Shown here piece after piece: positions 15,901-39,717 of a DNA stretch of 64,000 nucleotides. Made by a program: the position numbers and the translations under genes. Location of the stretch: IMG/VR virus record IMGVR_UViG_3300042367_000228, positions 124,001 through 188,000 of that record. The stretch is one strand, 5' to 3'. The notes under the pieces were generated by a model that was not told the origin of the DNA, did not search any database, and saw only the letters and a list, made by a program, of their open reading frames with translations. The first letter of the stretch is position 1; each line of letters starts with the position of its first letter.

Positions 15901-18900
15901 ATGTTTATCAGTAGTTGATGACGGTTCTCCATCTACCGGAAATCCAACAATTAATGAAGGTGTAAGCGGTAATACTATAAAATTTACTGTTACTGCTAAA
16001 GAATCAGATATCGGACATGCATTAACATATAAAATATTCCCAGTTGGAATGCAGACTACTGATTTTGTTAATATATCATCGTTTACAGGTACTACTGATT
16101 TAGTAAGTGCAAATAAAACTGTAGAGTTTACATTATCTACTACTCCTGATTCAACTACTAATAAAACTGCTAAATCGTTTTATGTAACATTTACAAGTAC
16201 AGTAACACCTACAGGTAACATAAACACTTGTAAGTCAAGAGTTGTTAATGTAGCAGATTCGTCAAAGACTGCAGCACCGGAAAATTATGCAGTTGAAGAC
16301 AATGGTACAAATCCATTACCGTCAAAATTATTACCGTCTATAAATGAAGGCGGCGACGGTAGTAGCATAACATTTACTGTTACTACTAAAACTACTGACA
16401 ATGGAAATCCATTATATTGGCGAATAAAAAACCCATCAGGGGCGTATATTAATGAAAAATGTTTTTCAATTGGATCATTAACAGGTCAGACTGCTAATGT
16501 TGCAAGTAGAACAGCAACATTAACATTAACTGCAGTGGCAGACACCGCAGATAATAAACCAGCTAAAAAGTTTTATGTCGAATTTAGTACAACTTCTACG
16601 TTCCCAAAAACAATTGCAACTGGGTTAACATCTCGTACTGTTGATATTGCTGATACATCTAAAACATATTATCCGCCTTCTGCAGTTAGTATCGAGGTAA
16701 CATATATGCCAGCAGTAGTGTATCCGGGGGATAAATTTGTAGTTCAATGTAAATTAGCATCGACTACTTCAACTCCATTACCTGCATCGCCATTATTAAA
16801 GGTATCATGGGTTATTAATTCGGCTAACACTACCATTGCGGCAAATGTTAGACAACAATCTAAAGCTGATACACAAATTGGCGGAGTAGCGATGTCTCAA
16901 ACTGCTACACTTAAAAATCGTACAGGAACTACATTAGCAAATTCACAATTTTGTGTTCTTCCTTTGTTAGCATATAATAATCCTAATTTTGTAAGTAATA
17001 ATGACCCATGTGGTAATTTTACAATAACATTTACAGTGACTGATCCTGTTACAAATAAAACAGTTTCGGCAACAACTGATCCAATTCAGTGGAATCATAT
17101 AGTAATAAAACAAACGATAAAAAACTCTGGACCATGGTCTATTCCAAAAGATGCTAATTTTGTTAATATAAAACTTTATGGTGGTGCCGGTGACGGTGGC
17201 GTTGATACTGGTGGTAGTAGAACAGGCGGGTACGGTGCAACTGGTGACATTGTTATTGGTACTGTTAATGTTCAAAATATTTTATCAAAAAGTTTATATT
17301 TTAAATTTATACGTGGTTCAGACGGTGGCCCTGCTAAAACAAGTGGCTGGAAAATTGCAGCAGGAACAACAGGCGGTGGCGCCGCAGTAGTATATCCTGG
17401 TATAAATGATAAAGGAACAGTAATTGCAGTTGCAGCAGGCGGCGGCGCAGGTGGTAATCAATGGACCAATGACGGCGGATCTGGTAGAAATGGAGCAGCA
17501 CCGACATTTGTTACAACGTATAGCTCATCAGTTGATAACGTTGGATTTTCAGTTGCACCAACATATGGCAACGGTGGTGCAGGGGCACCCAGAGGTACAA
17601 ACAATACTACTGGTATTGATGACAACAATGATAGACGCGGACCACGTTACGGCGGTGGCGGCGGTGTGTCGTATGTTCCTGCAACCTTTTCTCGTATAGC
17701 AGGAGAAATAGGAATAAACGGAGTGCCGCCAGGAGCTGTAGGTGAAAATCCGTTTGCGGTAGTTTCGTATTCACCGATATGTGCTGGACAAGCTATAGAG
17801 TCTTATGAATATATTGAATCGGGAACATACAAAGTTACTGTTCCTGCAGGAATTGCACATGCTAATGTTGTAGTAATTGGTGCAGGAGGCGGTGGCGGTG
17901 GTGCAGGCGGAACTGCATTAACTATTGATAATTCTGTTTATACATCTTATCCAACACAAACAGCTTCAAGTGACGTAACTGCATTTTTAAACAAATATGG
18001 AATCTACGGCGGTGCCGGAACAACTACGATTAAAGCATCGTATAGAACATCATTTGCTGCACCAAAACAATTAACAAATTATATATTAACCTATTATGGA
18101 AATAATTCAGGATATATCACACTTAATGGTACTAAACATTCGTTTAGTTCTAGTACATGGGCATTAGTAACTAAATCTATTACGCTAACTAATAAATTTG
18201 ATCGTAAAATTGAAGTATCCGCAACAATTAAGGCCGCGTCGTATTCAGCCTTAGTAGGAACAAATGTTACAGGTACCGGTACTGGTGCAAAGTTTAATGT
18301 AACAATAGCCGGAACAGTGTATACGACTGTTAAAATATATGCAGCGGGTAAAAATTATGCAGTAGGTGATCAAATTACAATTAGTGGTCGTAATTTAGGT
18401 GGTACTGACGTAAATAATCTCGTAATTACAGTTGCAACAGTAAATAGTGGAAAGATTGCTACTATTACTACAGTTGGTACAGCGGATGGGCATTATATTG
18501 CTGCAACGTTAAGAGTTGATGACGGGTCAGACACATTATTTGATCCTGCTATTCATAGTACAAACGATAACAAAAATTTTTATAGAGAAGAAGATATCTT
18601 ATGGACGACACGTAAACCTAAAAATCTTATTACTGCTGGAGTAGGCACAAGTAATGGTAGTAGCGGAGCAGGCGGCGGTGCAGGCGGCGGTGAAGTTACC
18701 ACTATAGCTGTTACAAGTGGGGACGAACTTACAGTAGTAGTCGGAGCAGGCGGTAAAGGTGGTACTGGACAATACGACACATCTGCAGGTGCAGCTGGGC
18801 AAGTTGGCGGTTCTAGTTCAATAACAGGAACAGGTGTATCAGTTACTGTATCGGGCGGTAATTATGGAAGCAGTTCTTCGTCAGGAGTTGCAGCTGCAGG

Positions 18901-19129
18901 CGGTGCTGGCGGAGCTGGTGCTGCAGAAGTCGGAGGTGCAGGATTACCAGGTAAAACTAATACATCTACATCTGTTACTACAACTGCAGGCGGTGCTGGC
19001 GGCGTAAACACAACATCGTACGGTGGAGGTGGTAGTGGCGGGAGTTTAGTCGAATCTACCCAAGAAACTATATTTAATTCAGGTACAGCCGGACGTCCGG
19101 GATATGTGTTAATAGCATGGCGTCCGTAA
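9965..19129 (+). CDS. Giant tail/adhesin protein with ~15 Calx-beta/Ig-like repeats and two glycine-rich domains
   Basis: 3054 aa, Thr/Ser/Gly-rich. Repeats of ~120-130 aa follow the pattern 'xEG...vtFtvtT...vyW....DF....G.....D...EG.E.F.i'. C-terminal GAGGGG tracts. Confidence 0.7.
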   Translation: MATPEIITLKEFNDAQVIVAKVLGAGSGDYGYNQTVTSSQQLSVTGPEVAKLRNDIYRALHHQKGVANANTLMPAFVALNGTVSQSIRIATTGTPAIGTTPAVLGTIDSGRFSMFTGTGAKVTNADTFPNFITDQNWNGTTTQTTTVTFIDATHMRSFFNAGSTIQILPSKSGVVTVKNTAWTNLLNLGTITFQRSGVTTASKPLVTDTTGTGFDTLTSTNAVIFSRSSDTKTEVYTINAKLSGDHTIIFTSTFSNSGSDVTGTLSSTVKLLRASYDQTDIVNVTTLSIGAPVSIVSLGSTTNEQWNTLAGTTGVTYSVGSVLTTVVAGTGLGTGTVTFPYVTIPAPGVISTIVPGLASPTYTITKSPVTSQISETGAFVSVSFTVNTHNYTGTHIYYRIVKANSSASDIIEADFVDKPLAGALAINQSTGVSETLALTANADNATEGLDKFDIEFRTTENVNDPVVTSILKAFNDVPISIIDTSITPKVIPRTIRFASLAAGKMSASTTEGATISFGIISTGISEPYDTVTWRIYPVATNPVVITASDFKEGIEGTFTMPSNQLYTLDLHISADTDVTEKLEEFQVYLYLTDPVTNAPNKTKNANSYMVQIGADAALVTQGYEVLTPLQLTTVEGDPVGISVPFKTPYLPPAGQKVWYRISAPDSLNAADGADFTDGLSSGSCPVTVTGNSTTGSGSGTLRKYAKNDKITEGTQGFIVEFFKDSAFSQKFGETTTLTITENVGYTVTRSTPSMIEPLADGSTAGKVTEITFTLNTPFIPNSPETLVDWEVKKINSAGGIGEFTTNDFIDGEINGSNPVVDNKVIVTLRANNDGLTEGTEQFFVRFTYPDGDGTAYKDSPIASITETVKYTIDVAAGSSTSMVEALASNSQGVVFDITTPFLPPNTPVYWETVVPAGNRTSKFLPSDFADNKTSGTIYINQGGTITNQATLTRIAIIDTDIEGNETFQIILKTGTAKSTEVARSPVITITEDIKGKIDKGSTTTLVEGATGATFKITTPKLPDGTKVFWNINQGSAGKIQNIDFLVSDAKGKSEQRLSGYVLTKSNAATLTIAARKDVVLNSSDGTEPDEKFTISIRIGSETADIEDTTSEITIQDVSSYVITADQTAVKESDGLSLATSRTVTFTVYTPYMDDGTVLYWTTASSAGTITASDFKDGLLRDTVKVYKNKATIIRSMNDDQTSEGNEKFYIQIREGGYDNPVVKGGVSPGVLIYDNSQGAPEPEPPGKPTAVVTTLTNSLTFVEGSTIRLQVATTNVLPTDNCFWSAYSVAPGGIVDDLSKIQSSAAIHVQGSSDPRTVTIEDIVVTPDLINEGAEVFIFQFHKGSVASKAIGYLPITLVDTVKYSIFVTNSLISEAGNTQTTFNITTPLTNTLLKWTIVPESGNSGTGVSGADFTVANIYNFDSPSMTGTVAIGANGTGAFALSAATDSIAEVTEKFHIILKKPGTGGAYEVIPDLQSDVVSIQDLTGYTLTPTAVGYNLPSASYTVTAGTSITYTLTTPKISKLSNPWKWELLGSNLVGMMSTSGYITVNATDISYSFIVTTNAEKILDTKKFTVQITDFDGGKKTVSGNPTITITAGVKNTIVPKVNGAVLESPYNITESTAVTFAVVSTLPKVYWYLAQTTTEETANTNKIDSNDFSTNQPLAGTLVPSPTAKTASFTLTFANKLNRKHGNKKFHIILSDVAPSTPIQSALPTALVSTETITRTENTVYTITPSLSAPYYTNEGTAVTFTVTTPFISADTFYKWEVVSTGVSSISTVQVNTSANVTQTTPGALSGTFKVFSATNSGTFAITVTNDNIDNTRSYQIRISDTSNAVKIQTNDPGNQIIYVESNPTWGIIATASATSDTEIASIMEGDPITITVTRPASAPDNTIKKIRWSVVKSDNDSTFIPSHVVMPSSNTASVKSDGTFIFSFKASIDNPLSSPNTNRTFKIALTDDSLNPISNVDDLVITITDYLCLSVVDDGSPSTGNPTINEGVSGNTIKFTVTAKESDIGHALTYKIFPVGMQTTDFVNISSFTGTTDLVSANKTVEFTLSTTPDSTTNKTAKSFYVTFTSTVTPTGNINTCKSRVVNVADSSKTAAPENYAVEDNGTNPLPSKLLPSINEGGDGSSITFTVTTKTTDNGNPLYWRIKNPSGAYINEKCFSIGSLTGQTANVASRTATLTLTAVADTADNKPAKKFYVEFSTTSTFPKTIATGLTSRTVDIADTSKTYYPPSAVSIEVTYMPAVVYPGDKFVVQCKLASTTSTPLPASPLLKVSWVINSANTTIAANVRQQSKADTQIGGVAMSQTATLKNRTGTTLANSQFCVLPLLAYNNPNFVSNNDPCGNFTITFTVTDPVTNKTVSATTDPIQWNHIVIKQTIKNSGPWSIPKDANFVNIKLYGGAGDGGVDTGGSRTGGYGATGDIVIGTVNVQNILSKSLYFKFIRGSDGGPAKTSGWKIAAGTTGGGAAVVYPGINDKGTVIAVAAGGGAGGNQWTNDGGSGRNGAAPTFVTTYSSSVDNVGFSVAPTYGNGGAGAPRGTNNTTGIDDNNDRRGPRYGGGGGVSYVPATFSRIAGEIGINGVPPGAVGENPFAVVSYSPICAGQAIESYEYIESGTYKVTVPAGIAHANVVVIGAGGGGGGAGGTALTIDNSVYTSYPTQTASSDVTAFLNKYGIYGGAGTTTIKASYRTSFAAPKQLTNYILTYYGNNSGYITLNGTKHSFSSSTWALVTKSITLTNKFDRKIEVSATIKAASYSALVGTNVTGTGTGAKFNVTIAGTVYTTVKIYAAGKNYAVGDQITISGRNLGGTDVNNLVITVATVNSGKIATITTVGTADGHYIAATLRVDDGSDTLFDPAIHSTNDNKNFYREEDILWTTRKPKNLITAGVGTSNGSSGAGGGAGGGEVTTIAVTSGDELTVVVGAGGKGGTGQYDTSAGAAGQVGGSSSITGTGVSVTVSGGNYGSSSSSGVAAAGGAGGAGAAEVGGAGLPGKTNTSTSVTTTAGGAGGVNTTSYGGGGSGGSLVESTQETIFNSGTAGRPGYVLIAWRP

Positions 19130-26603: not shown

Positions 26604-27041
26604 CTATAGTTTGTTAACTTTAAGGATTCCAAAATCTTGATCTGTAATATCAATACCTTCCGCTGCTGCAGCATTGTAACAGATATCTCTATACCAACGA
26701 CCTACAATTTCATCTTCTGGATCACCATCAAAACCGTACCCTTCTTGTTTTAATTTTTCAATCCAGTAATCATTCCAATCGATTTCAAAGAATCCGTTTC
26801 TGACATTGTCTGGATTAACTCTAAAACCGATTACATCTACCCATGGTTCTTGTTTTAGTGTTGCTTTTTCTTTTTCAGTTAACGGTGCTTTCTCGACAGC
26901 AACTTTAGCTTTTGGTTTAGCTTTAGTTTTTGGTTTAGCTTTTAACTGTTGTTTAGCTTTAATTGCCGCTTGTACTTCTTGTTGGTGTTTTAATTGTGGA
27001 TTTTCGCCACTAAACACTTTTTTTATAAAATTTCCAAACAT
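26604..27041 (-). CDS. Hypothetical protein
   Basis: 145 aa with KEKAT..EPWV...NGFFEIDWN; overlaps the queE stop. Confidence 0.6.
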   Translation of the reverse strand: MFGNFIKKVFSGENPQLKHQQEVQAAIKAKQQLKAKPKTKAKPKAKVAVEKAPLTEKEKATLKQEPWVDVIGFRVNPDNVRNGFFEIDWNDYWIEKLKQEGYGFDGDPEDEIVGRWYRDICYNAAAAEGIDITDQDFGILKVNKL

Positions 27042-27883
27042 TATGTTCCCCAGTTGTTGCCGAAGAGAGGGAGGTGAAGTCTATCACTATATCTCAATCC
27101 GTGTTGTAATGCAAGTTCAGCTACACGCTGATTATTAAGATTGTATACTTCAGTTACTCCGCCTACTGGCATTAAGTAAATTTCACCTTTAAATCCTTTA
27201 TCTTTGTATAACTGCATTACTTCGAGTGCTTCAGTAACATCATCTTCAGACGCTACTACAAACTTTAAATATGACCCATGCCCTGAAAATTGATATTCGG
27301 TTACAATTTCAGGACGTATCGCTTTTTCTCTAGGCTCACCACTTACACTTAGTTTAGGACTAATTGAAAACGTAGTTTGATACCGACGTTCTTGATATAA
27401 GTAATCTTCAAACGTGTTTAATAGTTCTTGTGTACCATTAGTTTCAAATGTAATGTTTTTTAAGTCTGCAAGTTTAGGATGTCTTAGTAATTCTGGATAT
27501 ATTTGTTGCCAACCTGGTAATAATGGTTCGCCGCCTGTAATTACTAAGTGTACTCCACCCCATTCACCGTTAGGTAACAGCGCAATCATTCTGTCTACAA
27601 TTTCATCAGTAGACATAGCTGGACTTAAATGCTTAAACTGCGGATATATCGCAGCATATGAGTCACAACCAGTAGTTACTAATGGAAGTAAATTATAGCT
27701 TGTATATAATGATGCAGATTTTGCAAGATCCAAAGCTTCCGTACTTAATTCACCGTTTTGCATTCCAAAACCTCTACAGCGAAAATTGCAACCAAATGTT
27801 CGTAAAAAAATTGACGGTACTCCCATAAATCGCCCTTCGCCTTGCAGTGAGTAAAATATCTCGCTTATTTTAATGTGTGACAT
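27041..27883 (-). CDS. queE: 7-carboxy-7-deazaguanine synthase (radical SAM)
   Basis: EIFYSLQGEG..GVPSIFLRT.GCNFRC..(insertion)..GCDS, VITGGEPLL, ETNGT, SPKL, RLH. Confidence 0.9.
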   Translation of the reverse strand: MSHIKISEIFYSLQGEGRFMGVPSIFLRTFGCNFRCRGFGMQNGELSTEALDLAKSASLYTSYNLLPLVTTGCDSYAAIYPQFKHLSPAMSTDEIVDRMIALLPNGEWGGVHLVITGGEPLLPGWQQIYPELLRHPKLADLKNITFETNGTQELLNTFEDYLYQERRYQTTFSISPKLSVSGEPREKAIRPEIVTEYQFSGHGSYLKFVVASEDDVTEALEVMQLYKDKGFKGEIYLMPVGGVTEVYNLNNQRVAELALQHGLRYSDRLHLPLFGNNWGT

Positions 27884-28671
27884 GTATTATCCTTGATTAA
27901 TTTAGTTATACCAAATTCTTTAAAAGATTTTCCAACAAACGTTGAAAACTCATTATGAATTGACGCAAATTTATGTGTTATAATAACATCATTATTAATA
28001 ATAGTCAATGTATTTTTAGTAAATGTTGGATAAACTGTTAGTAGTTCTTTACTAGTGTTACAAAATCCTTTAGGTGTACAGTAAGAGTATTTAGATGCAG
28101 TTTGGCTTCTAACTATAGATTGTTGACAAACTATGCGTGGTCGTTTACTAGCTTCTCTTTTTTTGTTAACAGTTGCTATACTGTCTTTTCTACCCTTTGC
28201 TAATGCAACATATATAATACCGTTATATTTGTCAAAAAGTTCTTTAGGAATTCGTTTAATTTCTAAAGTATTCAAATTTTTTGCAACCACTGTGCCTTTA
28301 CTATAATTACTTACAACCTTTGCATGCGATTCTCTAAGGTATGCATACACTCTATTGGTTATTTTATAAGATCGGCATACATCACCAGTTTTAGAATACA
28401 CCATTAAGTGTAATGCTTTAATCATTTTAGGACTATTTGTGCCTTTTGCTAATAATAAATGTGCTATATAATGATGCCTTGCACTTAACGTAATTAAGTT
28501 GTTAATATTATCTAATCCGCCAAATGACTTAGGAACGATATGATGAGTTTCGGTGTATTTGTCATTAAGTACTAAGGTTTTACAATGCTCAATAAATGTT
28601 ACATAGCGGGTTATATTATGATTGTTTGGATTTAAAGAATGTTTTAAAATATGTTGTTTATAGTCAGTCAC
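27865..28671 (-). mobile_element. Free-standing HNH homing endonuclease
   Basis: ETHHIVPKSFGG.D...NLITLSARHHYIAHLLL; basic C-terminus; overlaps the queE start. Confidence 0.8.
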
Positions 28672-29365: not shown

Positions 29366-30043
29366 TTATTTGTTTACAATACTCATAAATTCTGCACGAG
29401 TAGTTGGATCGTTTTTAAATGCACCACCTAACTTACTAGTAACAGTAGAACTGCCAGTATCTTCTACACCTCTTGCAGCAACACAATAATGTTTTGCATC
29501 AATAACTACTGCAATATTATCAGTGCCTAATATGTATTCTAATGCATGGAATACTTGTTCGGTTAATCTTTCTTGTACTTGCGGACGTTTTGCAAAGTAT
29601 TCAACTACACGATTAATTTTGCTTAGTCCAAGTACAACCTCGTTTGGAATATAACCAACTGTTGCAAAGCCGTCAATTACAACTCCGTGATGTTCACAAT
29701 TACTTTGTATGTTTACATTTCTTTCCACAACAATTTCATTGTAGCCCATTTTGTTTTTAATAGTAGTACACTTTGGAAAGTTTTCTTCTTTAAGTCCAAA
29801 ATATATTTCATTTGTGTACATTTTAGCCATTCGATTTGGTGTTTCTGCTAAACTATCATCTGTTAAGTCCATTCCTAATGTTGACCATATTGTTGTAAAT
29901 GCGTTTTCAATAATGTCAATTTTTGTTTTATTATCAACTACTAGGGCTGTATTATTAATCGGAGTTTCGACTCCTTTACTAATTAAATATTCTCTTACTC
30001 GTTTACCTAACGCTGGATCTGTTTTAGTTTTATCAAAGCTCAT
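29366..30043 (-). CDS. folE: GTP cyclohydrolase I
   Basis: ETPNRMAKMY, SNCEHH, GLSKINR, RPQVQERLT, HYCVAARGV. Confidence 0.95.
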   Translation of the reverse strand: MSFDKTKTDPALGKRVREYLISKGVETPINNTALVVDNKTKIDIIENAFTTIWSTLGMDLTDDSLAETPNRMAKMYTNEIYFGLKEENFPKCTTIKNKMGYNEIVVERNVNIQSNCEHHGVVIDGFATVGYIPNEVVLGLSKINRVVEYFAKRPQVQERLTEQVFHALEYILGTDNIAVVIDAKHYCVAARGVEDTGSSTVTSKLGGAFKNDPTTRAEFMSIVNK

Positions 30044-30057
30044 TATTTTAATTCCTG

Positions 30058-30918
30058 TTATATTTGTTTGTGATTTTTAAAAGTAGGTTTATCATGTTTC
30101 CAAATTAATCCAATTTGATAGCATTGTGTAGGATTATCGCTAATATCTTGATTAGTTCGGTATTTTCCTTTAAGTTCACCTTCAAAAATTATTCTCTGTT
30201 TAGAAGGTTTATTTAATCTACCATATGTAATATTATAATTGTTTTCTAAGTAAAAGTCAACATCTTTTTTAGATAAAAAATATTCAACATTGTTAATTAT
30301 ACACCATTTATACCCTTTAGTTGCAGATCTACCATACATGCCATTATTAGTACCTACTCTTGCCATAGTAGTGTTAGCACCAATTCTTGTTTTAATACCG
30401 GTTGTAACAATAATATCATGATGACTATTAGCCTCTTGTAAATCTAATAATTTAGATTTCTTAATAATAGTATGTTCTTTGATGTTAGTATTGTATACTG
30501 TAAATGTGTCTGTTCTTAGCCCAATGTGCGGTTGTAAGTTACGAACAGGGTTACTCCTTGCAGTTTGATGGGACACCCACCCTCTCTCACGAATATTTGT
30601 TATTTTATAGTTTCTAAATTCTAAAATTAATTTAGTCTCTAATTCTACTGCATCTTCTTCAGATAGATTAGTGGCTACTTTAAAAATTATTGGTAATAAC
30701 TGCAATCTAGTTAATTCTCTAATTGTGTTTAATTTATGTGAATTTTTATATTTTCGTGTAGGCCGTGCTTCTTTAAGATGATCAAATAATCGATTATTTT
30801 TACCGTAACCTACATAAAATGGTTTAAATAACAGTGAACAAAATGTAGAAACATATTGACCTGGTGTTCTTGGATCTAAGTATACATAGACATAGTATAT
30901 ATTGTTATTAGATGACAT
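30058..30918 (-). mobile_element. Free-standing GIY-YIG endonuclease with NUMOD3-like motif
   Basis: YYVYVYLDPR...PFYVGYG...R..H, ELETKLI, GTNNGMYGR. AAGGA RBS precedes the ATG at 30918. Confidence 0.78.
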
Positions 30919-30995
30919 ATAAGATTCCTTACTCCTTACATAATTGATTTTTAAAATGGGCATTCCTATCATGATTGCCCATTGTTATTTATTAG

Positions 30996-31157: not shown

Positions 31158-31497
31158 TTTTTACCTCCGATCTTGCTATTTCTAAAAACATTTGATATTT
31201 TTCGTATGCTGCTTTAACAGTTGGATTAGAATCTCTAACATACATATCTTCATAATATTTTTTATTCCAGTCTTCGCACTTTTCAGCTTTGTCAATTAAC
31301 TTTATAAAATCGTTCTCGTGTATTTTAACAGTTAATGACCGTGTAACGTTTGCTCTTTCGCTTGGTAGGTTTGATCTTGACCAATCTAACGAATAGTTAT
31401 CACCTGCAGCATAAAATTGTTCAACGTCTATGCTTCGTATACCGTGTTTCTTAGCTATTGAATGTAGTTCCATTATTTCTTCCAGTAGTTTTCCCAT
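31141..31497 (-). CDS. Hypothetical protein
   Basis: 118 aa ending in NPTVKAAYEKYQMFL. Confidence 0.55.
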   Translation of the reverse strand: MGKLLEEIMELHSIAKKHGIRSIDVEQFYAAGDNYSLDWSRSNLPSERANVTRSLTVKIHENDFIKLIDKAEKCEDWNKKYYEDMYVRDSNPTVKAAYEKYQMFLEIARSEVKNDRFN

Positions 31498-32003
31498 GGA
31501 AAGTCAATCCAAATCGGATCGTCTCGTTTATCAAATTCTTCAGCACAATAATCAACATGTGCATTGCTAGCAGAATTATCAAACACTGTAGCAAATCTTA
31601 CATTTTTATGCCAAACATCGTGTTTCCATCTTATAGAATCTGGTAAACATAATGATTGCCAATCTTCTTTAATCCAATCGAGTGTTGCACCCGAATCGTT
31701 AATATCGTCTACAATTAAAATGTTTTTAGCACGTCCGGTACTTGCTAGTTCGTCATCAGTAACACCAAATGCATCACAAGCCATCCATGCATTATGTTCA
31801 TTGTCGTCTGGATGGTCACGTAAACTAACATGTAATGTTAGCATCTTAACTCCGAGATACTGACTAAGTAAGTTAGCGGGGATAAGTCCCCCGCGTGTGA
31901 TTCCGACAATGTAATCTGGTTTCCAATTAGCAGCTTGAACTTGGCGTGCTATCTCTAATGCGGCACCTTCTAATTGTGCCCAACTATATTTTACTACTTT
32001 CAT
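31473..32003 (-). CDS. Type I purine phosphoribosyltransferase (Gpt-like)
   Basis: KPDYIVGITRGGLIPA, PRPP loop ILIVDDINDSGATL, WIDFPWE. Confidence 0.88.
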   Translation of the reverse strand: MKVVKYSWAQLEGAALEIARQVQAANWKPDYIVGITRGGLIPANLLSQYLGVKMLTLHVSLRDHPDDNEHNAWMACDAFGVTDDELASTGRAKNILIVDDINDSGATLDWIKEDWQSLCLPDSIRWKHDVWHKNVRFATVFDNSASNAHVDYCAEEFDKRDDPIWIDFPWENYWKK

Positions 32004-32431
32004 TCGTCGTCCTTTGGTAACATGCTATCCTCATAGCAAATTGCATAAATTGTTTTTAAATTTCCGTATGCTTTTTCTAAACCTGGATATTCGTCGCATA
32101 ACTTCTTAAATGCATCCCATTCTGGAAACGCATCTATAAAAGGTCGTCCGTTCATTGCAGTTGAGTTACTCCAGCTACCGTTACTACTTAATGTACTACC
32201 TCCTATTCCGTTATATGCATAGTAATTACTTGTTAAATTAGTAGCTATAGTATTATACCCGTATACACCATTAGAACCTGTGATAGTAATTGTATCACTT
32301 GCTGCTGCTGTTCCACTCATAACATTTGACGCCGTGTATGCCGATAATGTACTTGCATCGAACGCCGGTATACGAACATGTGCATCTCCATCCATAGTAA
32401 ATGTAATCGTATCTTTATTTGAATCTATCAT
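32000..32431 (-). CDS. Hypothetical protein
   Basis: 143 aa with a low-complexity N-terminus and C-terminal LCDEYPGLEKAY. Confidence 0.55.
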   Translation of the reverse strand: MIDSNKDTITFTMDGDAHVRIPAFDASTLSAYTASNVMSGTAAASDTITITGSNGVYGYNTIATNLTSNYYAYNGIGGSTLSSNGSWSNSTAMNGRPFIDAFPEWDAFKKLCDEYPGLEKAYGNLKTIYAICYEDSMLPKDDE

Positions 32432-33509
32432 ATAATTTCTCTGCGTTAAAAAACTCTTTTGTTAAATATTCTGCTTGGGTGTTTACATAATGCGCTATAC
32501 TATCATAGTTTTCTATATAATAAATAATTTTATTACATAAATCATAACTGTGCGTTTCGTAATTTTCGTAACTAATAGACCATTCTGACGGGTATTTAAA
32601 ATGATACATATACATTTCTTTATAACTTAGTCTATCGGGTACCATTGGTATAGCACCAAGCAATGCGCCTTCGTAACAACTTATGCCTAGGGTTTCTTGT
32701 AAGTTAGCACTAAACACAATCTTTGCTTCGCTTAATAATTTATGATATTCGTCTTTAGTTAGCTTCTCGTCTTGGCACACTACAAAATCGTATTGCGGTA
32801 ATTGCATAGCTAATGATCTAAAAATATCAACTTGTTTTTCTGGAGCAACCCTATGCGGAAACAATATTAGATCACGTTTTTCTGAATTTTTATAAGGAGT
32901 TAGCGTATCTTCTAAATACTCCATAGGCCAACCTGTTTTTATAATAGACCCATCGTCGTATATTTCGTCCCAATCCTCGTCGTACCATGGATTTTCACTT
33001 GGATAACCATTTTGTATAACATTGTTAAAAAACATTCTTACGTGAAACTCGGTAGCAAAATAGTTATGAGTGTATGCAGTGTACATACTTTTTTCAGCAA
33101 GTCTAACCCATGCGTCTTTAATATTACCTAAAAAGTCGTGTGGATCATAACTTCCTGCGTGCCATAGACCGTGGAATGTCCAATTTAGATGTTCTAAATC
33201 GTTAATGTACTTTAATTGTATAATAGTAGGATTCCATGCATCAGTAAATAAGAAATGATCATTAGGAGTAGTCCTGTGATAATTTTTTAAAAATCCAACA
33301 AGCTGAGAACTTTTCCATACGTTTGTGTCGACAAAGTTTAAAAATGCACCCGGAGTTACATCGGTTGCGTTTTGTTCGCCGTCTATTTGAATTATGTTGT
33401 ATTTGTCGTTAATATAATTGCTTAGTTGTTTAGGGATATGAGTGTGCCATTGTCTAGTATATCTAGTATCTAATGGTTCTACAGGAAATATCCAAATAGT
33501 AGGTTTCAT
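32415..33509 (-). CDS. GT-B (GT4-like) glycosyltransferase
   Basis: ILFPHRVAPEKQ, IVFSANLQETLGISCYEG...AIPMVPDRLSY.EM (ExxGxxxxE motif). Confidence 0.8.
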   Translation of the reverse strand: MKPTIWIFPVEPLDTRYTRQWHTHIPKQLSNYINDKYNIIQIDGEQNATDVTPGAFLNFVDTNVWKSSQLVGFLKNYHRTTPNDHFLFTDAWNPTIIQLKYINDLEHLNWTFHGLWHAGSYDPHDFLGNIKDAWVRLAEKSMYTAYTHNYFATEFHVRMFFNNVIQNGYPSENPWYDEDWDEIYDDGSIIKTGWPMEYLEDTLTPYKNSEKRDLILFPHRVAPEKQVDIFRSLAMQLPQYDFVVCQDEKLTKDEYHKLLSEAKIVFSANLQETLGISCYEGALLGAIPMVPDRLSYKEMYMYHFKYPSEWSISYENYETHSYDLCNKIIYYIENYDSIAHYVNTQAEYLTKEFFNAEKLYDRFK

Positions 33510-33565: not shown

Positions 33566-33814
33566 TTATGATTTTTTATAATTTTTAGGTCTAACACCGT
33601 TTGGCCAAGGTTTATTACCTTGATATGGTTTGCGTGGACGTTTACTTGCTAAGTATGCACCATACGATTTACTATCTTTGCGATATAAATCCGATGGATC
33701 AAATTTACGTAACTCAATTCTGCAAAAGTCATGAAATGCTTCTAAATCTTCAAAGATTTTAACAACATCTGGACGTGATTCGAAGTATGAGAATGTTTTG
33801 TAATTTTTAGCCAT
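33566..33814 (-). CDS. Small basic hypothetical protein
   Basis: 82 aa with PDVVKIFEDLEAF.DFCR. Confidence 0.6.
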   Translation of the reverse strand: MAKNYKTFSYFESRPDVVKIFEDLEAFHDFCRIELRKFDPSDLYRKDSKSYGAYLASKRPRKPYQGNKPWPNGVRPKNYKKS

Positions 33815-34275: not shown

Positions 34276-34304
34276 ATTATACATGTTATTTGTGCGGTTG
34301 TCAA
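34276..34304 (-). promoter_or_regulatory. Consensus sigma70 promoter
   Basis: TTGACA-17-TATAAT. Confidence 0.65.
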
Positions 34305-34363: not shown

Positions 34364-34741
34364 CTATTTCATTAGATGACCTGCGTCAGTTGGCTGGTAT
34401 GTAACAATGCCATCAGATTCACCATCTTCAGATACACAGACTGTATAGTGCCTATCTCCATATTTAGGCAATAAATGATTAGTTAAAATATCACTAGCAA
34501 TCATTTCGCATGATTTGTAATTTTGATCACCTGCAGTGATAAAATCAGTTAATGCCCATTTAACCAAAAAAAACTCTAATTCTCTATCTAAGTGATTAAC
34601 AGAAATAGTTACTTCGATTTTAAAAATGTGACGATGTATATTTTCAAGAAATGCAATTTTAGAATCAATCAATCCTGCATTTGGGTAACAGTGCATACCT
34701 TCAAACTCTGTTCGAATTTTAATAAATGTTTGTAATTTCAT
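34364..34741 (-). CDS. T-fold QueD-like protein, probably DpdL-type
   Basis: FEGMH, LENIHRHIF (LxxxHRHxF rather than the QueD CxxxHGH), ELEF, SCEMIA, VSEDGE; lies in the deazaguanine cluster. Confidence 0.7.
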   Translation of the reverse strand: MKLQTFIKIRTEFEGMHCYPNAGLIDSKIAFLENIHRHIFKIEVTISVNHLDRELEFFLVKWALTDFITAGDQNYKSCEMIASDILTNHLLPKYGDRHYTVCVSEDGESDGIVTYQPTDAGHLMK

Positions 34742-35265
34742 TTAATTATCTTGTCGTCGTTATAGTCGGTCCAACTAGTAAACACATCTTCATTTTGCAA
34801 AACTTTTAAGTTATGTGTCCACACGCCGGGGTTAGTTGCGTTAAAATCTATGTCATCTAATTTAACCATTGTATTATAACTCCAATCTTTAATATTTGCA
34901 ACCGGAAATCTAATTTGAGGAATAAAATTTTCATATGAACATAAATTAGTTTTATTATTAAAATCATTCATTGCTGTAACCGGAATATCTAATGAACAGT
35001 GTTTGCCTAATTTTAAAAAGTGCTCAATAATGTTATTCCAGTTGAGCCAGGTACCTGGTGTGTTTGGATTAAAACTGTGGTTTGCACCAAAGAAGATATG
35101 TGTAATATCTTCTTCAGTATCTAACCGGTGATGTATTGCTTCTGTAGTATGAGCACCAACAACAAATAATGTTTTTAAACCATATGCTGGAGTATGCTCT
35201 ACTTCGGTACCAACAAAAAACTTAGCAGTGTTAGTAGTTATATTGTTATTATACTGTCTATTCAT
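34738..35265 (-). CDS. Uncharacterised protein of the deazaguanine locus
   Basis: 175 aa (FFVGTEVEHTPAYG.KTLFVVG, HIFFGANHSF, KLDDIDFNATNPGVWTH); translationally coupled to both neighbours. Confidence 0.6.
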   Translation of the reverse strand: MNRQYNNNITTNTAKFFVGTEVEHTPAYGLKTLFVVGAHTTEAIHHRLDTEEDITHIFFGANHSFNPNTPGTWLNWNNIIEHFLKLGKHCSLDIPVTAMNDFNNKTNLCSYENFIPQIRFPVANIKDWSYNTMVKLDDIDFNATNPGVWTHNLKVLQNEDVFTSWTDYNDDKIIK

Positions 35266-36931
35266 CTTTAATGCTATCTTCTAGGGTAAGTAAAGTGTCT
35301 TCTTCTTCTTCAGAAAATTCAAATGCCGTCGGATCGACATTATCCTCATCTATGTCGTTAGGATCTATATCTTCAAGTGTCCAAAACTCATTAAACTTTG
35401 TATCAGCATTGATTGTTTTCTTGCCACAATTACCACGTGTACCAGGAATATCAATCCATAATTTGCTATATCTACTAATTAATTTCAATGCAGAACGCTT
35501 AGTTTTACTGCTAATGATTTTATCAATTATATCGCTAACATAAACTGGATTAAATTTTTCATCAACTAACATATATGGCAAAATATTGTTATCAAATGTT
35601 TGATTTGCTCTTTGTACAGCATCAATATGACTCCATACATTATGCCCCATTAAAATAGCGTAACTAAAACTATCCCAACTTGTTCTACCGACTTTGTTAA
35701 TTTTATTCGTACTGCCCATAGTAATCCAATATTTAGGATCATTTAAGTATAGTGGGTTTTTAAATAAGTCTTCATGATCAATGCCATCATTGTCTACTTC
35801 TGTCCAGTTAGGATCACCTGCACCGTAGATACAAATATCTTTTATTTGTACTTGATCAATAAGTGGACTTGGATTAAACACTTTAAAAATACCATCATCG
35901 ATAACCGCGTCTTTAAACAGTCTAGTATCATATGCGTATTTTTTATTATCAACACTCGGGACCATTCGATACACCCATTTAGATCTATCTTCTAATTCTG
36001 TAGTAATGTAAACCTGACCATTTGCTGTAGCCAAAAACGGACTAGCACAATCATAACTAATAGTAAAGCTAGGATTAACATATTTACGAACTGCTCGTTG
36101 AATTATAGTTAGTAAACATGCCCATTCTAATTTACTAGTTCCTAAGAAATGCATCCAGTCGTGCTGGCCTTCTTGAAGCATGTTATCAAATTTTAAACCA
36201 ATAATGCGTTTAAGTACTAACTCGGCATCGCACATGTTTTGTCCACCCATTGCCCAGCCATTAAATGCTTTATCACCGTAGATCTTAGTATCGCAAAACT
36301 TTTTCATACTTTGATACCATTTTTCTGCATCTTTGTGTGTTTCGCCTTGTAATACATTTAAGAATTTACAAGCACCTGTGCGATTTTGAATAAAGTATTC
36401 ATTGTTAATAAATGTACCTTTAACTGCATCTTTGTAATTTCTAATACCTGTTGCTTTTCTACCAGCCGGCATACGTGCTACCCACGCAGGAATATCAAGA
36501 CACATACCGTAATCCATTAACTCGTCCATCCATCGCAGTACTTGTTCACGTTTCTTTTGTGCTTTAGGACAAGTAGGATCTTTCCAATCAGCTGGCCATA
36601 CACCTTTCCCTATTTGGAAGCCTCCAGAGTCACCTAACACCCAACTAGTACTTCTATCTCTATTACGGAACATGTCTTCACTTTCGTCAAACTTATCTAA
36701 ATCTAAGTTTGCATGTCCAGCTGAGTACAAGCACCATTTATAATAAAATTCACCTTTTTCAGGTTCTAAGTAGTTAAGTCCCTCTACACCTGCTTTAAAT
36801 GATGTTGGAATACGTAACGGATCAACATAATTACCATAACGTTGTTTACCAACAAATGTTGAGTAAAACCCTGACGTTGCAGGCAAAAACACGGCATAAT
36901 CCTGTTGTGTTGCTGTTAAGTTTCTATTCAT
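35258..36931 (-). CDS. dpdA: TGT-fold guanine transglycosylase (DpdA-like, presumed to act on DNA)
   Basis: GDSGGFQ catalytic motif, LD.P, NVLQG, WAMGG, MHFLG, YDCAS; clustered with folE and queE. Confidence 0.78.
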   Translation of the reverse strand: MNRNLTATQQDYAVFLPATSGFYSTFVGKQRYGNYVDPLRIPTSFKAGVEGLNYLEPEKGEFYYKWCLYSAGHANLDLDKFDESEDMFRNRDRSTSWVLGDSGGFQIGKGVWPADWKDPTCPKAQKKREQVLRWMDELMDYGMCLDIPAWVARMPAGRKATGIRNYKDAVKGTFINNEYFIQNRTGACKFLNVLQGETHKDAEKWYQSMKKFCDTKIYGDKAFNGWAMGGQNMCDAELVLKRIIGLKFDNMLQEGQHDWMHFLGTSKLEWACLLTIIQRAVRKYVNPSFTISYDCASPFLATANGQVYITTELEDRSKWVYRMVPSVDNKKYAYDTRLFKDAVIDDGIFKVFNPSPLIDQVQIKDICIYGAGDPNWTEVDNDGIDHEDLFKNPLYLNDPKYWITMGSTNKINKVGRTSWDSFSYAILMGHNVWSHIDAVQRANQTFDNNILPYMLVDEKFNPVYVSDIIDKIISSKTKRSALKLISRYSKLWIDIPGTRGNCGKKTINADTKFNEFWTLEDIDPNDIDEDNVDPTAFEFSEEEEDTLLTLEDSIKDE

Positions 36932-38549
36932 GTTTTTTCCATATATATGTTTTATTTCCGCAGTCCCAGATTCTATCATAATTATTATTTTTCATATTTT
37001 CCCATTCGGTTTTTGATAAATCAACAACTTCTAATAATTTAGATAATTTATGTTTTTGAAATTTAATTCTACTCATTATGCGAGACGGATCACTATTTAA
37101 AAAATACCAGTAATTTGGATCAGTATCGTGTATAAATTCAAAACCAAGTTGTGTATATAAATTACCAGTTGACCATCTTCTATCTGCATATGATACAATA
37201 CTACTCGGATTATGTAATTTTATAAAATGTTTAATTAATTTACTACCTGCACCAACTACTGTAGTATTCAATTTATTACAAAAGCGAATCAATTCCCACT
37301 GTGCAGCACTTGTATATCTAGCTTTTGCAAATGTAGCTAACGATACTAATTCACCATCAAACATTGCGCCAATATTTACACTTGACGAGCAATCACCTTG
37401 AATATGATTTTCATTTAAGAAGTTACGTTTATCTGTAGTTGATACGTCTATTATACTACAGTTTCGTGCAAAAATCTTGGTTGATTTATTCAATTTATGC
37501 AATAATTTTGATTTTATAATATCAGTTTGCGTGTTCCATTCATAATCCCATATTTGTATAAGTTGAATATTTTGCTGTTCACATGCAACAGTCTTTGATA
37601 CATGGTATTGTTTAGATTTTCCGTGAAGTTCGCTATGCCAAAAACTTCCATTAAACTCAATTGCAAGATTAAAATCCGGTAAAAAAATGTCAAGCTCACG
37701 TGGTGCAATGATTGTTCTATCATTTCTAATTATGTTTTGAGTGTAATTAGATAAAAAGTCAACTAAATTAGTTTCTCCGGCCGAAACATTAAATCGTTGT
37801 ATATCAATACCAGCTGCAACCAATCTTTTAAGTATCGGCGTTGGAGAACACCCTAGTTCTTCTGCAATTTGACTACATGGTTTCTTTAATGTTACATGCT
37901 GTTCTATAAGAAACTCAAGATTGTGCAATTTATCAATATTCTCATTAGTTAAATGAATATGTTTATTTGACGAAACACCAAACTTTTCAATACAAGTATT
38001 GTGACGTTTATCAATTACGTCATCCCAATTTCTATTAAGAGATGACTGACTAATTTTTAACTTAATCATATCATTTTTAGCTGCATTATCCACACCGTAC
38101 TTTTCTAAATTTCGTTGTTTGATTTTTTCTTTAATTTCTAAAGATTTAAATACGTTATCAACACCGTACTTTTCCATTGTAGCAGCATTTCGAGTTTCTC
38201 TAATAGTTTCATTGTGCATAGGATGACCGCCATACTTAGCTTGATTAGTTTGAGATTTTTTTAATAATATTGCAGGATCAGTGCCCATGCATTTAGCAGA
38301 GCACCATTCCGAATATGATTTTAAACTTTTAACAAACTTAGTAGATAGCTTTCCGCACCGGGTACAGGTTGGTACGTCAATCGTGTCATTAATAACGTGC
38401 CACAATCGTTGATGCGGAGTAGCAGTTTCGCTTAGAAAACTTGTAATGTCAATAAACTCAATAACATGTTCATCTAATATTGTACGTTTAGCAAATAATT
38501 CATTAGCAGTTGATTGCAATTGTATAGAATTATTCAACAGCTTTGTCAT
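36924..38549 (-). mobile_element. Hef/Vsr-like PD-(D/E)xK endonuclease with Zn finger, KYGVDN repeats and a C-terminal Mom-like GNAT domain
   Basis: CTRCG..WCSAKC, repeated EKYGVDN, ELDIF.P..LAIEFNG.FWH. C-terminal ELIRFC..VVGAGSKL..SYADRRWS.GNLY..LGF. Confidence 0.75.
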
Positions 38550-39688: not shown

Positions 39689-39717
39689 ATTATAATGTAT
39701 TTGTAGTGGGTTGTCAA
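39689..39717 (-). promoter_or_regulatory. Consensus sigma70 promoter
   Basis: TTGACA-17-TATAAT upstream of the clamp gene. Confidence 0.8.

What the first reader, a model, noticed from the sequence alone, without database searches (positions are those of the whole stretch)
34738..35265. Unassigned 175-aa protein translationally coupled between dpdA and the T-fold gene
It overlaps both neighbours and has enzyme-like motifs (EVEHTP, HIFFGANHSF, KLDD.DF..TNPGVW.H) that I cannot place in a family. It is the prime candidate for an undescribed step or a DpdA accessory subunit.
Basis: partly seen in the sequence, partly recalled or inferred. Interest (0 to 1): 0.6.

Follow-up and report, generated by a model that had tools for sequence, protein, structure and literature searches.

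The report
Unknown protein in phage deazaguanine cluster
A real, strongly conserved 175-residue phage protein with no known family or clear known fold sits inside a gene set that replaces guanine in phage DNA with a 7-deazaguanine derivative, making it the best candidate for a missing step in that pathway.

Summary
The ORF at 34738..35265 (minus strand, 175 aa, "X175") is real. It overlaps the upstream gene by 8 nt and the downstream gene by 4 nt, and it carries the quoted motifs.

- **Upstream gene (573 aa):** a very divergent DpdA/TGT-like transglycosylase.
- **Downstream gene (125 aa):** DpdL, the T-fold protein proposed as the 7-carboxy-7-deazaguanine (CDG) decarboxylase. It has the published LxxxHRHxF signature.
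- **Host genome:** a complete 372-kb jumbo phage that encodes FolE, QueD and QueE but not QueC.

The family is large and almost entirely viral: 4510 clusters at 90% identity and 726 at 50%. Wherever enough flanking DNA is held, it lies in the same region as DpdA, DpdL, a GT-B glycosyltransferase and QueE, in at least five gene orders. PA5oct is the exception, with X175 27 kb from them. I saw it only in clusters that also carry the glycosyltransferase, although some such clusters lack it.

Its near-invariant polar residues lie at strand ends, which suggests an enzyme. I conclude it is a dedicated but non-universal component of a probably glycosylated 7-deazaguanine pathway. Its reaction is unknown.

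The parts
34738..35265 (-). X175: a 175-aa protein of an unnamed viral family, the subject of the finding. Near-invariant residues across members at 30-50% identity: G19, E21, E23, T32, L33, F34, G37, H56, G60, S64, K135, D138, N145, G147, V148, W149, T163, W165, Y168, D171.
   Evidence: model pLDDT 94.7
35258..36979 (-). 573-aa divergent DpdA/TGT-like DNA transglycosylase. Its stop overlaps the X175 start by 8 nt.
   Evidence: TGT-type motifs are invariant in 25 homologues. hhalign to the ACP17 DpdA gives E 2.7e-4 and to a four-phage DpdA2-like alignment E 1.1e-4. There is no Pfam hit.
34364..34741 (-). 125-aa DpdL, a QueD-like T-fold protein proposed as the CDG decarboxylase. Its start overlaps the X175 stop (ATGA).
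   Evidence: LENIHRHIF signature; phrog_17812; 39% identity to the ACP17 DpdL; alignment A3; PMC10516641
32415..33509 (-). 364-aa GT-B-type glycosyltransferase, conserved in the same clusters.
   Evidence: Weak Glycos_transf_1 and Glyco_transf_61 hits for this protein and its ACP17 homologue. Homologues are annotated glycosyltransferase in Phosso and PAC2. Alignment A4.
33566..33814 (-). 82-aa conserved small protein between DpdL and GT, found in 67 of 93 related loci. Function unknown.
31473..32003 (-). 176-aa phosphoribosyltransferase. The equivalent gene in the BUCT-ZZ01 cluster is annotated xanthine-guanine PRTase.
   Evidence: Pfam Pribosyltran E 2e-16
29366..30043 (-). GTP cyclohydrolase I (FolE), the first step towards CDG.
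   Evidence: Pfam E 1.8e-58
27041..27883 (-). QueE, the radical-SAM CDG synthase.
   Evidence: Pfam Radical_SAM. The N-terminal SLQGEG...FLRTFGC region matches solved QueE chains.
34276..34304 (-). Sigma-70-like site matching the consensus at 12 of 12 positions, in the 257-nt gap after dpdL. It is a likely start of the next unit (p96-p82-GT).
   Evidence: a consensus match only
39689..39717 (-). Sigma-70-like site matching the consensus at 12 of 12 positions, downstream of the DNA polymerase gene. It is a likely start of the unit that ends with dpdA-X175-dpdL.
   Evidence: a consensus match only

Best explanation
X175 is a dedicated, probably catalytic component of a phage guanine-hypermodification module.

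The inferred pathway is as follows. FolE, QueD and QueE make 7-carboxy-7-deazaguanine (CDG), and there is no QueC, so synthesis stops there. DpdL and X175 then process the deazapurine. The DpdA-family transglycosylase swaps the product into DNA in place of G. The co-conserved GT-B glycosyltransferase probably adds a sugar.

I propose that X175 is a small alpha/beta enzyme that acts on the 7-deazaguanine moiety after QueE, either as the free base or once it is in DNA. Its role would be to help produce the form that DpdA inserts and that the glycosyltransferase can use. The likely active site is built from an ExE motif, His56, Ser64, Lys135, Asp138 and the NPGVW loop, all at the C-terminal ends of parallel strands.

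What is shown: the gene is real, it is under strong constraint, it is essentially confined to viruses, and it lies in or beside the DpdA/DpdL/GT/QueE cluster in several gene orders. What is inferred: that it is an enzyme, what its substrate is, and that the final base is glycosylated.

My confidence that it belongs functionally to this pathway is about 0.8. The figure given below is for the more specific claim that it is an enzyme acting on the deazapurine.
For: **Neighbourhood in the window's lineage.** In 93 related loci, X175 is followed by DpdL in all 86 loci where tblastn found DpdL; in the seven without it the held DNA ends at or soon after X175. A DpdA homologue was found in 86 of the 93, upstream in the loci I inspected. 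The X175 stop and DpdL start overlap in 40 of 85 loci, and are within 30 nt in 47 of 85.

**Other gene orders.**
- ACP17: FolE-X175-DpdA-GT-DpdL-QueE.
- L111: DpdA-DpdL-GT-FolE-63aa-X175.
- L103: GFO-ADH-GT-63aa-106aa-X175-DpdL.
- L102: GT-72aa-X175-DpdL.
- L109: X175-DpdL-86aa-GT.
- PA5oct: X175 lies 27 kb from DpdA-GT-DpdL-QueE, but in the same genome.

**Supporting facts.**
- PA5oct DNA resists G-containing restriction sites and is reported to carry a modified G (PMC12191111).
- The window's own genome has FolE, QueD and QueE but no QueC.
- The family is essentially viral: only 7 hits in one genome from each of 185,579 prokaryote species, all on MAG contigs with the same phage synteny.
- Conserved polar residues sit right after predicted strands.
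- DpdA plus DpdL from ACP17 and phiST gave no dDG in E. coli, and the authors suggest other enzymes may be needed (PMC10516641).
- Some homologues carry long C-terminal tails ending in a Lys-rich peptide, which would fit a protein working at DNA.
Against: - Phosso and BUCT-ZZ01 have DpdL, GT and QueE but no X175 detectable by profile. BUCT-ZZ01 carries a DpdA2-like gene, and Phosso carries the p573-type DpdA elsewhere in its genome.
- The single-sequence tblastn of the phage collection found no Cellulophaga phage, so phiST, which does contain dDG (PMC10516641), appears to lack it. That check was not repeated with a profile. X175 is therefore not needed for deazaguanine insertion in general.
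- Most of the 93 loci belong to one phage lineage, so the neighbourhood counts are not independent observations.
- The complex prediction with DpdL gave no verdict.
- In PA5oct the gene sits beside two oxidoreductases rather than beside DpdA or DpdL. This fits a role in the sugar branch equally well.
Confidence: 0.4

Rival explanations
1. X175 is a non-catalytic accessory or adaptor subunit. It would bind DpdL or DpdA, for example to hand the base from one to the other, to cap the T-fold oligomer, or to regulate the pair.
For: - It overlaps both neighbours in the window.
- The X175-DpdL overlap recurs in 40 of 85 loci.
Against: - About 20 near-invariant positions, half of them polar or charged and placed at strand ends, look more like a catalytic or ligand-binding site than an interface.
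- The adjacent partner changes between lineages: DpdL, DpdA, FolE, GT or oxidoreductases.
- DpdA and DpdL occur without X175 in several phages.
- The complex prediction gave no verdict, which counts neither way.
Confidence: 0.2
2. X175 belongs to the glycosylation branch. It would tailor the sugar donor, or work with the GT-B glycosyltransferase, for example by preparing the acceptor group on the base.
For: - X175 was found only in clusters that also carry the GT. RHph_I1_18 and Bakedbeans have DpdL but neither GT nor X175.
- In PA5oct and L103 it follows GFO/IDH/MocA-type and ADH_N-type oxidoreductases, which are typical sugar-tailoring enzymes.
- Possible remote relatives of 143-155 aa in Xanthomonas phage X1 and Burkholderia phage BCSR5 overlap the start of the GT gene. 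hhalign gives E 7.8e-4 over 70 columns with the GxEVE...TxF...HxY motifs aligned.
Against: - Phosso and BUCT-ZZ01 have the GT but no X175.
- The window's own genome has no GFO or ADH homologues.
- The remote-relative link is weak (hhalign probability 25%).
- No resemblance to any known sugar-nucleotide enzyme was found.
Confidence: 0.2
3. X175 is unrelated to the modification. It could be a hitch-hiking early gene, for example in nucleotide metabolism or anti-defence, that simply sits in the replication and modification region of these phages.
For: - Most loci are from one syntenic lineage, so linkage could be inherited rather than selected.
- In PA5oct it lies 27 kb from the cluster.
Against: - It recurs within the cluster in at least five different gene orders, and in ACP17, which shares only 25% DNA polymerase identity with the window.
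- Every genome found to carry it and checked also has DpdA, DpdL, GT and QueE.
Confidence: 0.1

Closest known systems
Phage DpdA-DpdL pathway for 2'-deoxy-7-deazaguanine (Cellulophaga phage phiST; Cui et al., NAR 2023, PMC10516641)
   Same: FolE, QueD and QueE are present without QueC. There is a DpdL with the LxxxHRHxF signature and a divergent DpdA-family transglycosylase, all clustered next to the replication genes.
   Different: The cluster here also carries X175, a GT-B glycosyltransferase, a phosphoribosyltransferase and a conserved 82-aa protein. The paper's main text mentions neither a glycosyltransferase nor a phosphoribosyltransferase, and its supplements were not available to me. 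phiST appears to lack X175, based on a single-sequence tblastn only. The final base here is unknown.
QueE (7-carboxy-7-deazaguanine synthase, radical SAM)
   Same: QueE is the only solved protein whose structural alignment spans nearly all of X175:
- An ESM Atlas cluster named 'putative CDG synthase': TM 0.59 over 143 residues.

QueE works in the same pathway and binds the same class of ligand.
STAS / anti-sigma-factor antagonist domains (RsbS, SpoIIAA)
   Different: The match covers only the N-terminal two thirds of X175. Sequence identity is 6-15%, with no sequence signal. X175 has a further 55-residue C-terminal part that holds its most conserved motif (K-x-DD...TNPGVW).
Acidovorax phage ACP17 ASD50402 and Pseudomonas phage PA5oct EST35_0364 (both annotated 'hypothetical protein')
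   Same: These are true homologues in cultured phages. PA5oct matches at 41% identity (tblastn E 1e-26). ACP17 matches at 27% identity (profile E 2.4e-30).
   Different: The gene order differs. In ACP17 X175 lies between FolE and DpdA. In PA5oct it lies 27 kb from the DpdA-GT-DpdL block, after two oxidoreductase genes.

Membership tests
Radical SAM / QueE | A CxxxCxxC (or Cx14CxxC) motif that binds the 4Fe-4S cluster | tested here: not met
   P0001 has only two cysteines, C90 and C109, and no such motif. Only C90 is conserved in close homologues.
Radical SAM / QueE | Sequence-profile similarity to QueE or to Pfam Radical_SAM | tested here: not met
   hhalign of A1 and A6 against the phage QueE alignment A2 gave E 0.29 and 0.56. 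Neither Pfam nor PDB profile searches returned a QueE hit. A broader bacterial QueE profile could not be built.
Radical SAM / QueE | Partial (beta/alpha) barrel fold | tested here: inconclusive
STAS domain | Four- or five-stranded beta sheet with flanking helices, about 110 residues | tested here: inconclusive
7-deazaguanine DNA modification (Dpd) gene set of phages | Encoded with a DpdA-family transglycosylase and deazaguanine synthesis genes | tested here: met
   In the window, DpdA-like, DpdL, FolE and QueE lie within 8 kb, QueD is elsewhere in the genome, and there is no QueC. The same holds in ACP17, PA5oct, L102, L103, L109 and L111.
7-deazaguanine DNA modification (Dpd) gene set of phages | Required for, or changes, the DNA modification | not testable with these tools
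   This needs a knockout or a reconstitution experiment. The published DpdA plus DpdL reconstitution failed without it (PMC10516641), which is only suggestive.
DpdA / TGT (applies to the 573-aa neighbour, not to X175) | The catalytic DSGG[FL]Q motif and the following TGT-type barrel motifs | tested here: met
   LGDSGGFQ, LDIP, VLQG, GWAMGG and HFLGTS are invariant in A5 and align with the same motifs of DpdA2-like proteins (hhalign E 1.1e-4). Pfam TGT itself does not hit.
DpdL (applies to the 125-aa neighbour, not to X175) | A QueD-like T-fold in which the CxxxHGH motif is changed to LxxxHRHxF | tested here: met
   LENIHRHIF in P0122. HRH, F40 and the SCEM and SEDGE blocks are invariant in A3.

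The most novel reading that the evidence does not exclude
X175 catalyses a reaction not yet described on the 7-substituent of 7-deazaguanine. With DpdL it would convert CDG, or DNA-borne dCDG, into the acceptor that the co-conserved GT-B enzyme glycosylates. The DpdA-X175-DpdL-GT quartet would then make a new sugar-bearing 7-deazaguanine in the DNA of a very large group of environmental jumbo and T4-like phages, and of PA5oct and ACP17. A sharper form of the idea is that X175 is a QueE-derived barrel that lost its iron-sulfur cluster but kept the deazapurine/pterin pocket.
Probability: 0.25. Interest if true: 0.8.

Novelty: new variant of a known kind. Interest (0 to 1): 0.62.

Why it matters
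The known route to 7-deazaguanine in phage DNA is incomplete. DpdL's proposed decarboxylase activity has never been shown, and DpdA plus DpdL failed to rebuild the modification in E. coli (PMC10516641).

X175 is an abundant, unnamed viral family lodged in exactly these clusters, together with a glycosyltransferase that the main text of the 2023 description does not mention (its supplements were not available to me). It is therefore a concrete, testable candidate for the missing activity. It also hints that many of these phages carry a more elaborate, probably glycosylated, deazaguanine.

Two cultured phages, PA5oct and ACP17, encode it, so the test is practical. PA5oct is reported to have an unidentified modified G that is sensed by END nucleases (PMC12191111). 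Identifying that base bears on restriction evasion, on phage therapy candidates, and on sequencing and cloning of such DNA.

Tried and rejected
- **Mislabelled gene, corrected.** I first took the 364-aa ORF 32415..33509 for DpdA because it matches ACP17 ASD50404. Its conserved C-terminal motifs and weak Pfam hits show it is a GT-B glycosyltransferase.
- **QueE-derived hypothesis.** It is supported only by weak structural similarity, and profile-profile comparison gave nothing. I keep it as a lead, not a finding.
- **Complex prediction of X175 with DpdL.** No verdict (score 0.00, folded without alignments). This counts neither for nor against binding.
- **Fusion partners.** The longer family members (246-352 aa) have low-complexity tails, or one N-terminal extension, and no informative domain. 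One Portal_T4 fragment looks like a gene-calling artefact.
- **Language-model feature search in the ESM Atlas.** Only sub-threshold hits to unrelated DUFs (one search failed because the service was busy).
- **Candidates at the equivalent gene position.** The Phosso 'glycosylase' (177 aa) and the BUCT-ZZ01 174-aa protein are not X175 relatives.
- **Supplementary tables of PMC10516641.** These would give the authors' ACP17 gene assignments, but they are not held.

I did not use the read-laying tools, alternative genetic codes or metagenome scans. The large representative search was used once, after the word search and family scans had left the protein unassigned.

Full report
**Observation**

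The window has an ATG-started ORF at 34738..35265 on the minus strand, 175 aa (translated as P0001). Read on the coding strand:
- The start lies in AAAGATGAATAG, so it overlaps the stop of the 573-aa ORF 35258..36979 by 8 nt.
- Its stop shares ATGA with the start of the 125-aa ORF 34364..34741.

Two sigma-70-like sites match the consensus at 12 of 12 positions on this strand, at 39717-39689 and 34304-34276. They bracket a run of genes that ends dpdA-X175-dpdL, which fits a single transcription unit (consensus matches only).

The window is part of a complete 372,016-bp virus record with terminal repeats and 35.6% G+C, that is, a jumbo phage.

**The neighbours**

*The 125-aa protein is DpdL.* It carries LENIHRHIF. 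This is the LxxxHRHxF signature that Cui et al. give for DpdL, the QueD-like T-fold protein they propose as the 7-carboxy-7-deazaguanine (CDG) decarboxylase (PMC10516641). It is 39% identical to the protein at the matching position in Acidovorax phage ACP17.

*The 573-aa protein is DpdA-like.* It has invariant LGDSGGFQ, LDIP, VLQG, GWAMGG and HFLGTS blocks in 25 homologues. These align with the equivalent blocks of ACP17 ASD50403 (hhalign E 2.7e-4). They also align with a four-phage alignment of its relatives (E 1.1e-4 over 187 columns). ASD50403 is in turn 33-37% identical to proteins of Vibrio phages nt-1 and VH7D, and of phages X1 and BUDD where the gene is annotated queuine tRNA-ribosyltransferase. 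Cui et al. name the DpdA of nt-1 and VH7D DpdA2. The 573-aa protein is therefore a very divergent DpdA/TGT-family transglycosylase, and I do not assign a subfamily.

*My own early error.* I first labelled the 364-aa ORF 32415..33509 as DpdA. It is a GT-B-type glycosyltransferase.

*The rest of the cluster.* It holds a phosphoribosyltransferase, FolE and QueE. QueD lies elsewhere in the genome, and no QueC was found. This is the 'FolE, QueD, QueE, DpdA, DpdL, no QueC' pattern that the 2023 paper links to 2'-deoxy-7-deazaguanine.

**What X175 is not**

There was no hit in Pfam, PHROGs or NCBIfam. No family recurred when 103 members were each scanned against Pfam. Two profiles found nothing in PDB sequences.

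**Fold**

A first model reached pLDDT 84.7. A second, built on a more diverse alignment, reached pLDDT 94.7 and pTM 0.89. It shows a parallel sheet with flanking helices (strands at 16-20, 31-35, 56-59, 89-95 and 114-119) plus a C-terminal part with two short strands.

- STAS domains, over residues 12-119 only.

A shape search of the ESM Atlas also returned a 'putative CDG synthase' cluster at TM 0.59.

These values sit within the range the tool describes as common background. X175 also lacks the cysteine motif of radical SAM enzymes. Profile-profile comparison with the phage QueE family shows nothing. I therefore treat 'QueE-like barrel without a cluster' as a lead only.

**Family size and range**

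- The word search found 4510 clusters at 90% identity, none with a name or a Pfam domain.
- The exhaustive profile search found 726 representatives at 50% identity, 145 of them below E 1e-30.
- IMG/VR holds at least 582 contigs.
- One genome from each of 185,579 prokaryote species gave only 7 hits, all on MAG contigs with the phage synteny.

Across members only 30-50% identical to X175, these positions stay at 90% conservation or more: G19, E21, E23, T32, L33, F34, G37, H56, G60, S64, K135, D138, N145, G147, V148, W149, T163, W165, Y168 and D171. In the model most of them follow directly after a strand. That is where alpha/beta enzymes place their active sites. This is an inference, because I could not inspect the coordinates.

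Some members of 255-352 aa add a long acidic, low-complexity tail that ends in a conserved Lys-rich peptide.

**Gene context**

In 93 loci, tblastn with the window's proteins found DpdL in 86 and the DpdA-like gene in 86. Where DpdL was not found, the held DNA ends at or soon after X175. The block runs PolB - p245 - DpdA - X175 - DpdL - p82 - GT - ... - PRTase - FolE - QueE.

The X175 stop and DpdL start overlap in 40 of 85 loci. The DpdA stop and X175 start overlap in 21 of 86, and small genes are often inserted there (gene starts were taken as the first ATG).

Most of these loci are one lineage, so other arrangements matter more:

| Source | Gene order |
|---|---|
| ACP17 | FolE-X175-DpdA-GT-DpdL-QueE |
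| L111 | DpdA-DpdL-GT-FolE-63aa-X175 |
| L103 | GFO-ADH-GT-63aa-106aa-X175-DpdL |
| L102 | GT-72aa-X175-DpdL |
| L109 | X175-DpdL-86aa-GT |
| PA5oct | DpdA-GT-DpdL...QueE at 223-228 kb; X175 at 252.6 kb after GFO/IDH/MocA-type and ADH_N-type oxidoreductases |

PA5oct DNA is reported to resist several restriction enzymes in a way that points to a modified G (PMC12191111).

**Limits of the association**

The X175 profile recovers ACP17 as a positive control (E 2.4e-30). It finds nothing in Phosso, BUCT-ZZ01, X1, BCSR5, RHph_I1_18 or Bakedbeans, all of which have DpdL. The GT profile is positive in Phosso, BUCT-ZZ01, X1 and BCSR5, and negative in RHph_I1_18 and Bakedbeans. X175 was therefore seen only where the GT is present, but not in every such genome.

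In X1 and BCSR5, a 143-155-aa protein whose gene overlaps the GT start shares the N-terminal signature IG(L/I)EVEG...TxF...HxYISD...VT(L/V)(E/D). hhalign against the X175 profile gives E 7.8e-4 over 70 columns at 25% probability. This may be a remote, shorter relative.

**Interpretation**

X175 is almost certainly a working part of this module; I put that at about 0.8. Which step it performs cannot be read from sequence or fold.

I favour an enzyme acting on the deazapurine after QueE (0.4). The reasons are that its residue conservation looks catalytic, it is most often coupled to DpdL, and the known enzymes do not account for the chemistry. DpdL's activity is unproven, and a GT needs an acceptor group that neither CDG nor 7-deazaguanine obviously offers.

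The rivals are:
- a non-catalytic partner of DpdL or DpdA (0.2);
- a role in the sugar branch (0.2);
- an unrelated hitch-hiking gene (0.1).

The one complex prediction I could run, X175 with DpdL, returned no verdict.

**Novelty**

I found no paper that describes this protein. The main text of the 2023 paper mentions neither a glycosyltransferase nor a phosphoribosyltransferase. I class the finding as a new variant of a known kind of system. It is a 7-deazaguanine DNA-modification cluster with an undescribed, widespread protein family and a co-conserved glycosyltransferase.

Noticed in passing
window 32415..33509 (-); ACP17 ASD50404; PA5oct EST35_0317; Phosso XYS97382: A GT-B glycosyltransferase is conserved alongside DpdA and DpdL in many phage lineages, which predicts a sugar-bearing 7-deazaguanine. 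The main text of the 2023 pathway paper does not mention a glycosyltransferase.
   Followed up: partly
window 36924..38549 (-), 30058..30972 (-), 27865..28671 (-): Three homing-endonuclease-like ORFs are scattered through the modification cluster: a 541-aa protein (phrog_3339, DUF7487), a GIY-YIG LEM-3-like protein and an HNH protein. The 541-aa ORF overlaps the dpdA start by 56 nt and is missing from most related loci. In PA5oct a similar Hef-like endonuclease splits the DNA polymerase gene.
   Followed up: no
window 34364..34741 (-) and 29366..30043 (-): The window's DpdL is 64-71% identical to those of Synechococcus phage BUCT-ZZ01, L019 and L089, but only 36-45% identical to most phages of its own syntenic lineage. 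Likewise its FolE is 61% identical to ACP17's but only 31-37% identical to most lineage members. Single genes of the cluster appear to have been swapped between phages.
   Followed up: no
window 39689..39717 (-) and 34276..34304 (-): Two sigma-70-like sites match the consensus at all 12 positions (TTGACA, 17 nt, TATAAT). The second lies in the 257-nt gap between dpdL and the next gene.
   Followed up: no
proteins P0176, P0181, P0196, P0201, P0232 (loci L102, L103): Some X175 homologues carry 100-180-residue acidic, low-complexity C-terminal tails with repeated LGLDP...LKPE elements. The tails end in a conserved AYAEGAT-DPLGK...KK-K-KK peptide, which may be a DNA-binding or docking motif.
   Followed up: no
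L112:2994-3425 (Xanthomonas phage X1 WEM34305); L114:8635-9102 (Burkholderia phage BCSR5 QRE00064): Short proteins of 143-155 aa, whose genes overlap the start of the GT gene, share the GxEVE...TxF...HxY...VT(L/V)(D/E) signature of the X175 N-terminal half (hhalign E 7.8e-4). They may be remote relatives.
   Followed up: partly
L106:7358-7891 (Sinorhizobium phage Phosso XYS97380): In Phosso, which lacks X175, the position directly upstream of dpdL is occupied by a 177-aa protein annotated 'glycosylase'. It is unrelated to X175 in sequence.
   Followed up: partly
L001:5209-6977 (PA5oct EST35_0362 and 0363); L103:6638-8403: GFO/IDH/MocA-type and ADH_N-type oxidoreductase genes precede X175 in PA5oct and in a related metagenomic phage, but are absent from the window's genome. 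Other lineage members carry a UDP-glucose/GDP-mannose dehydrogenase-like gene or a Trp-halogenase-like gene in the cluster. This points to lineage-specific tailoring.
   Followed up: partly
window 31473..32003 (-): A phosphoribosyltransferase is conserved in the cluster and is annotated xanthine-guanine PRTase in BUCT-ZZ01. It could turn a free deazaguanine base into a nucleotide. If so, that would raise the question of whether this pathway acts purely after replication.
   Followed up: no
window 9965..19129 (+) and 1..4542 (+): Two giant ORFs of 3054 aa and at least 1513 aa lie on the opposite strand. I did not examine them.
   Followed up: no
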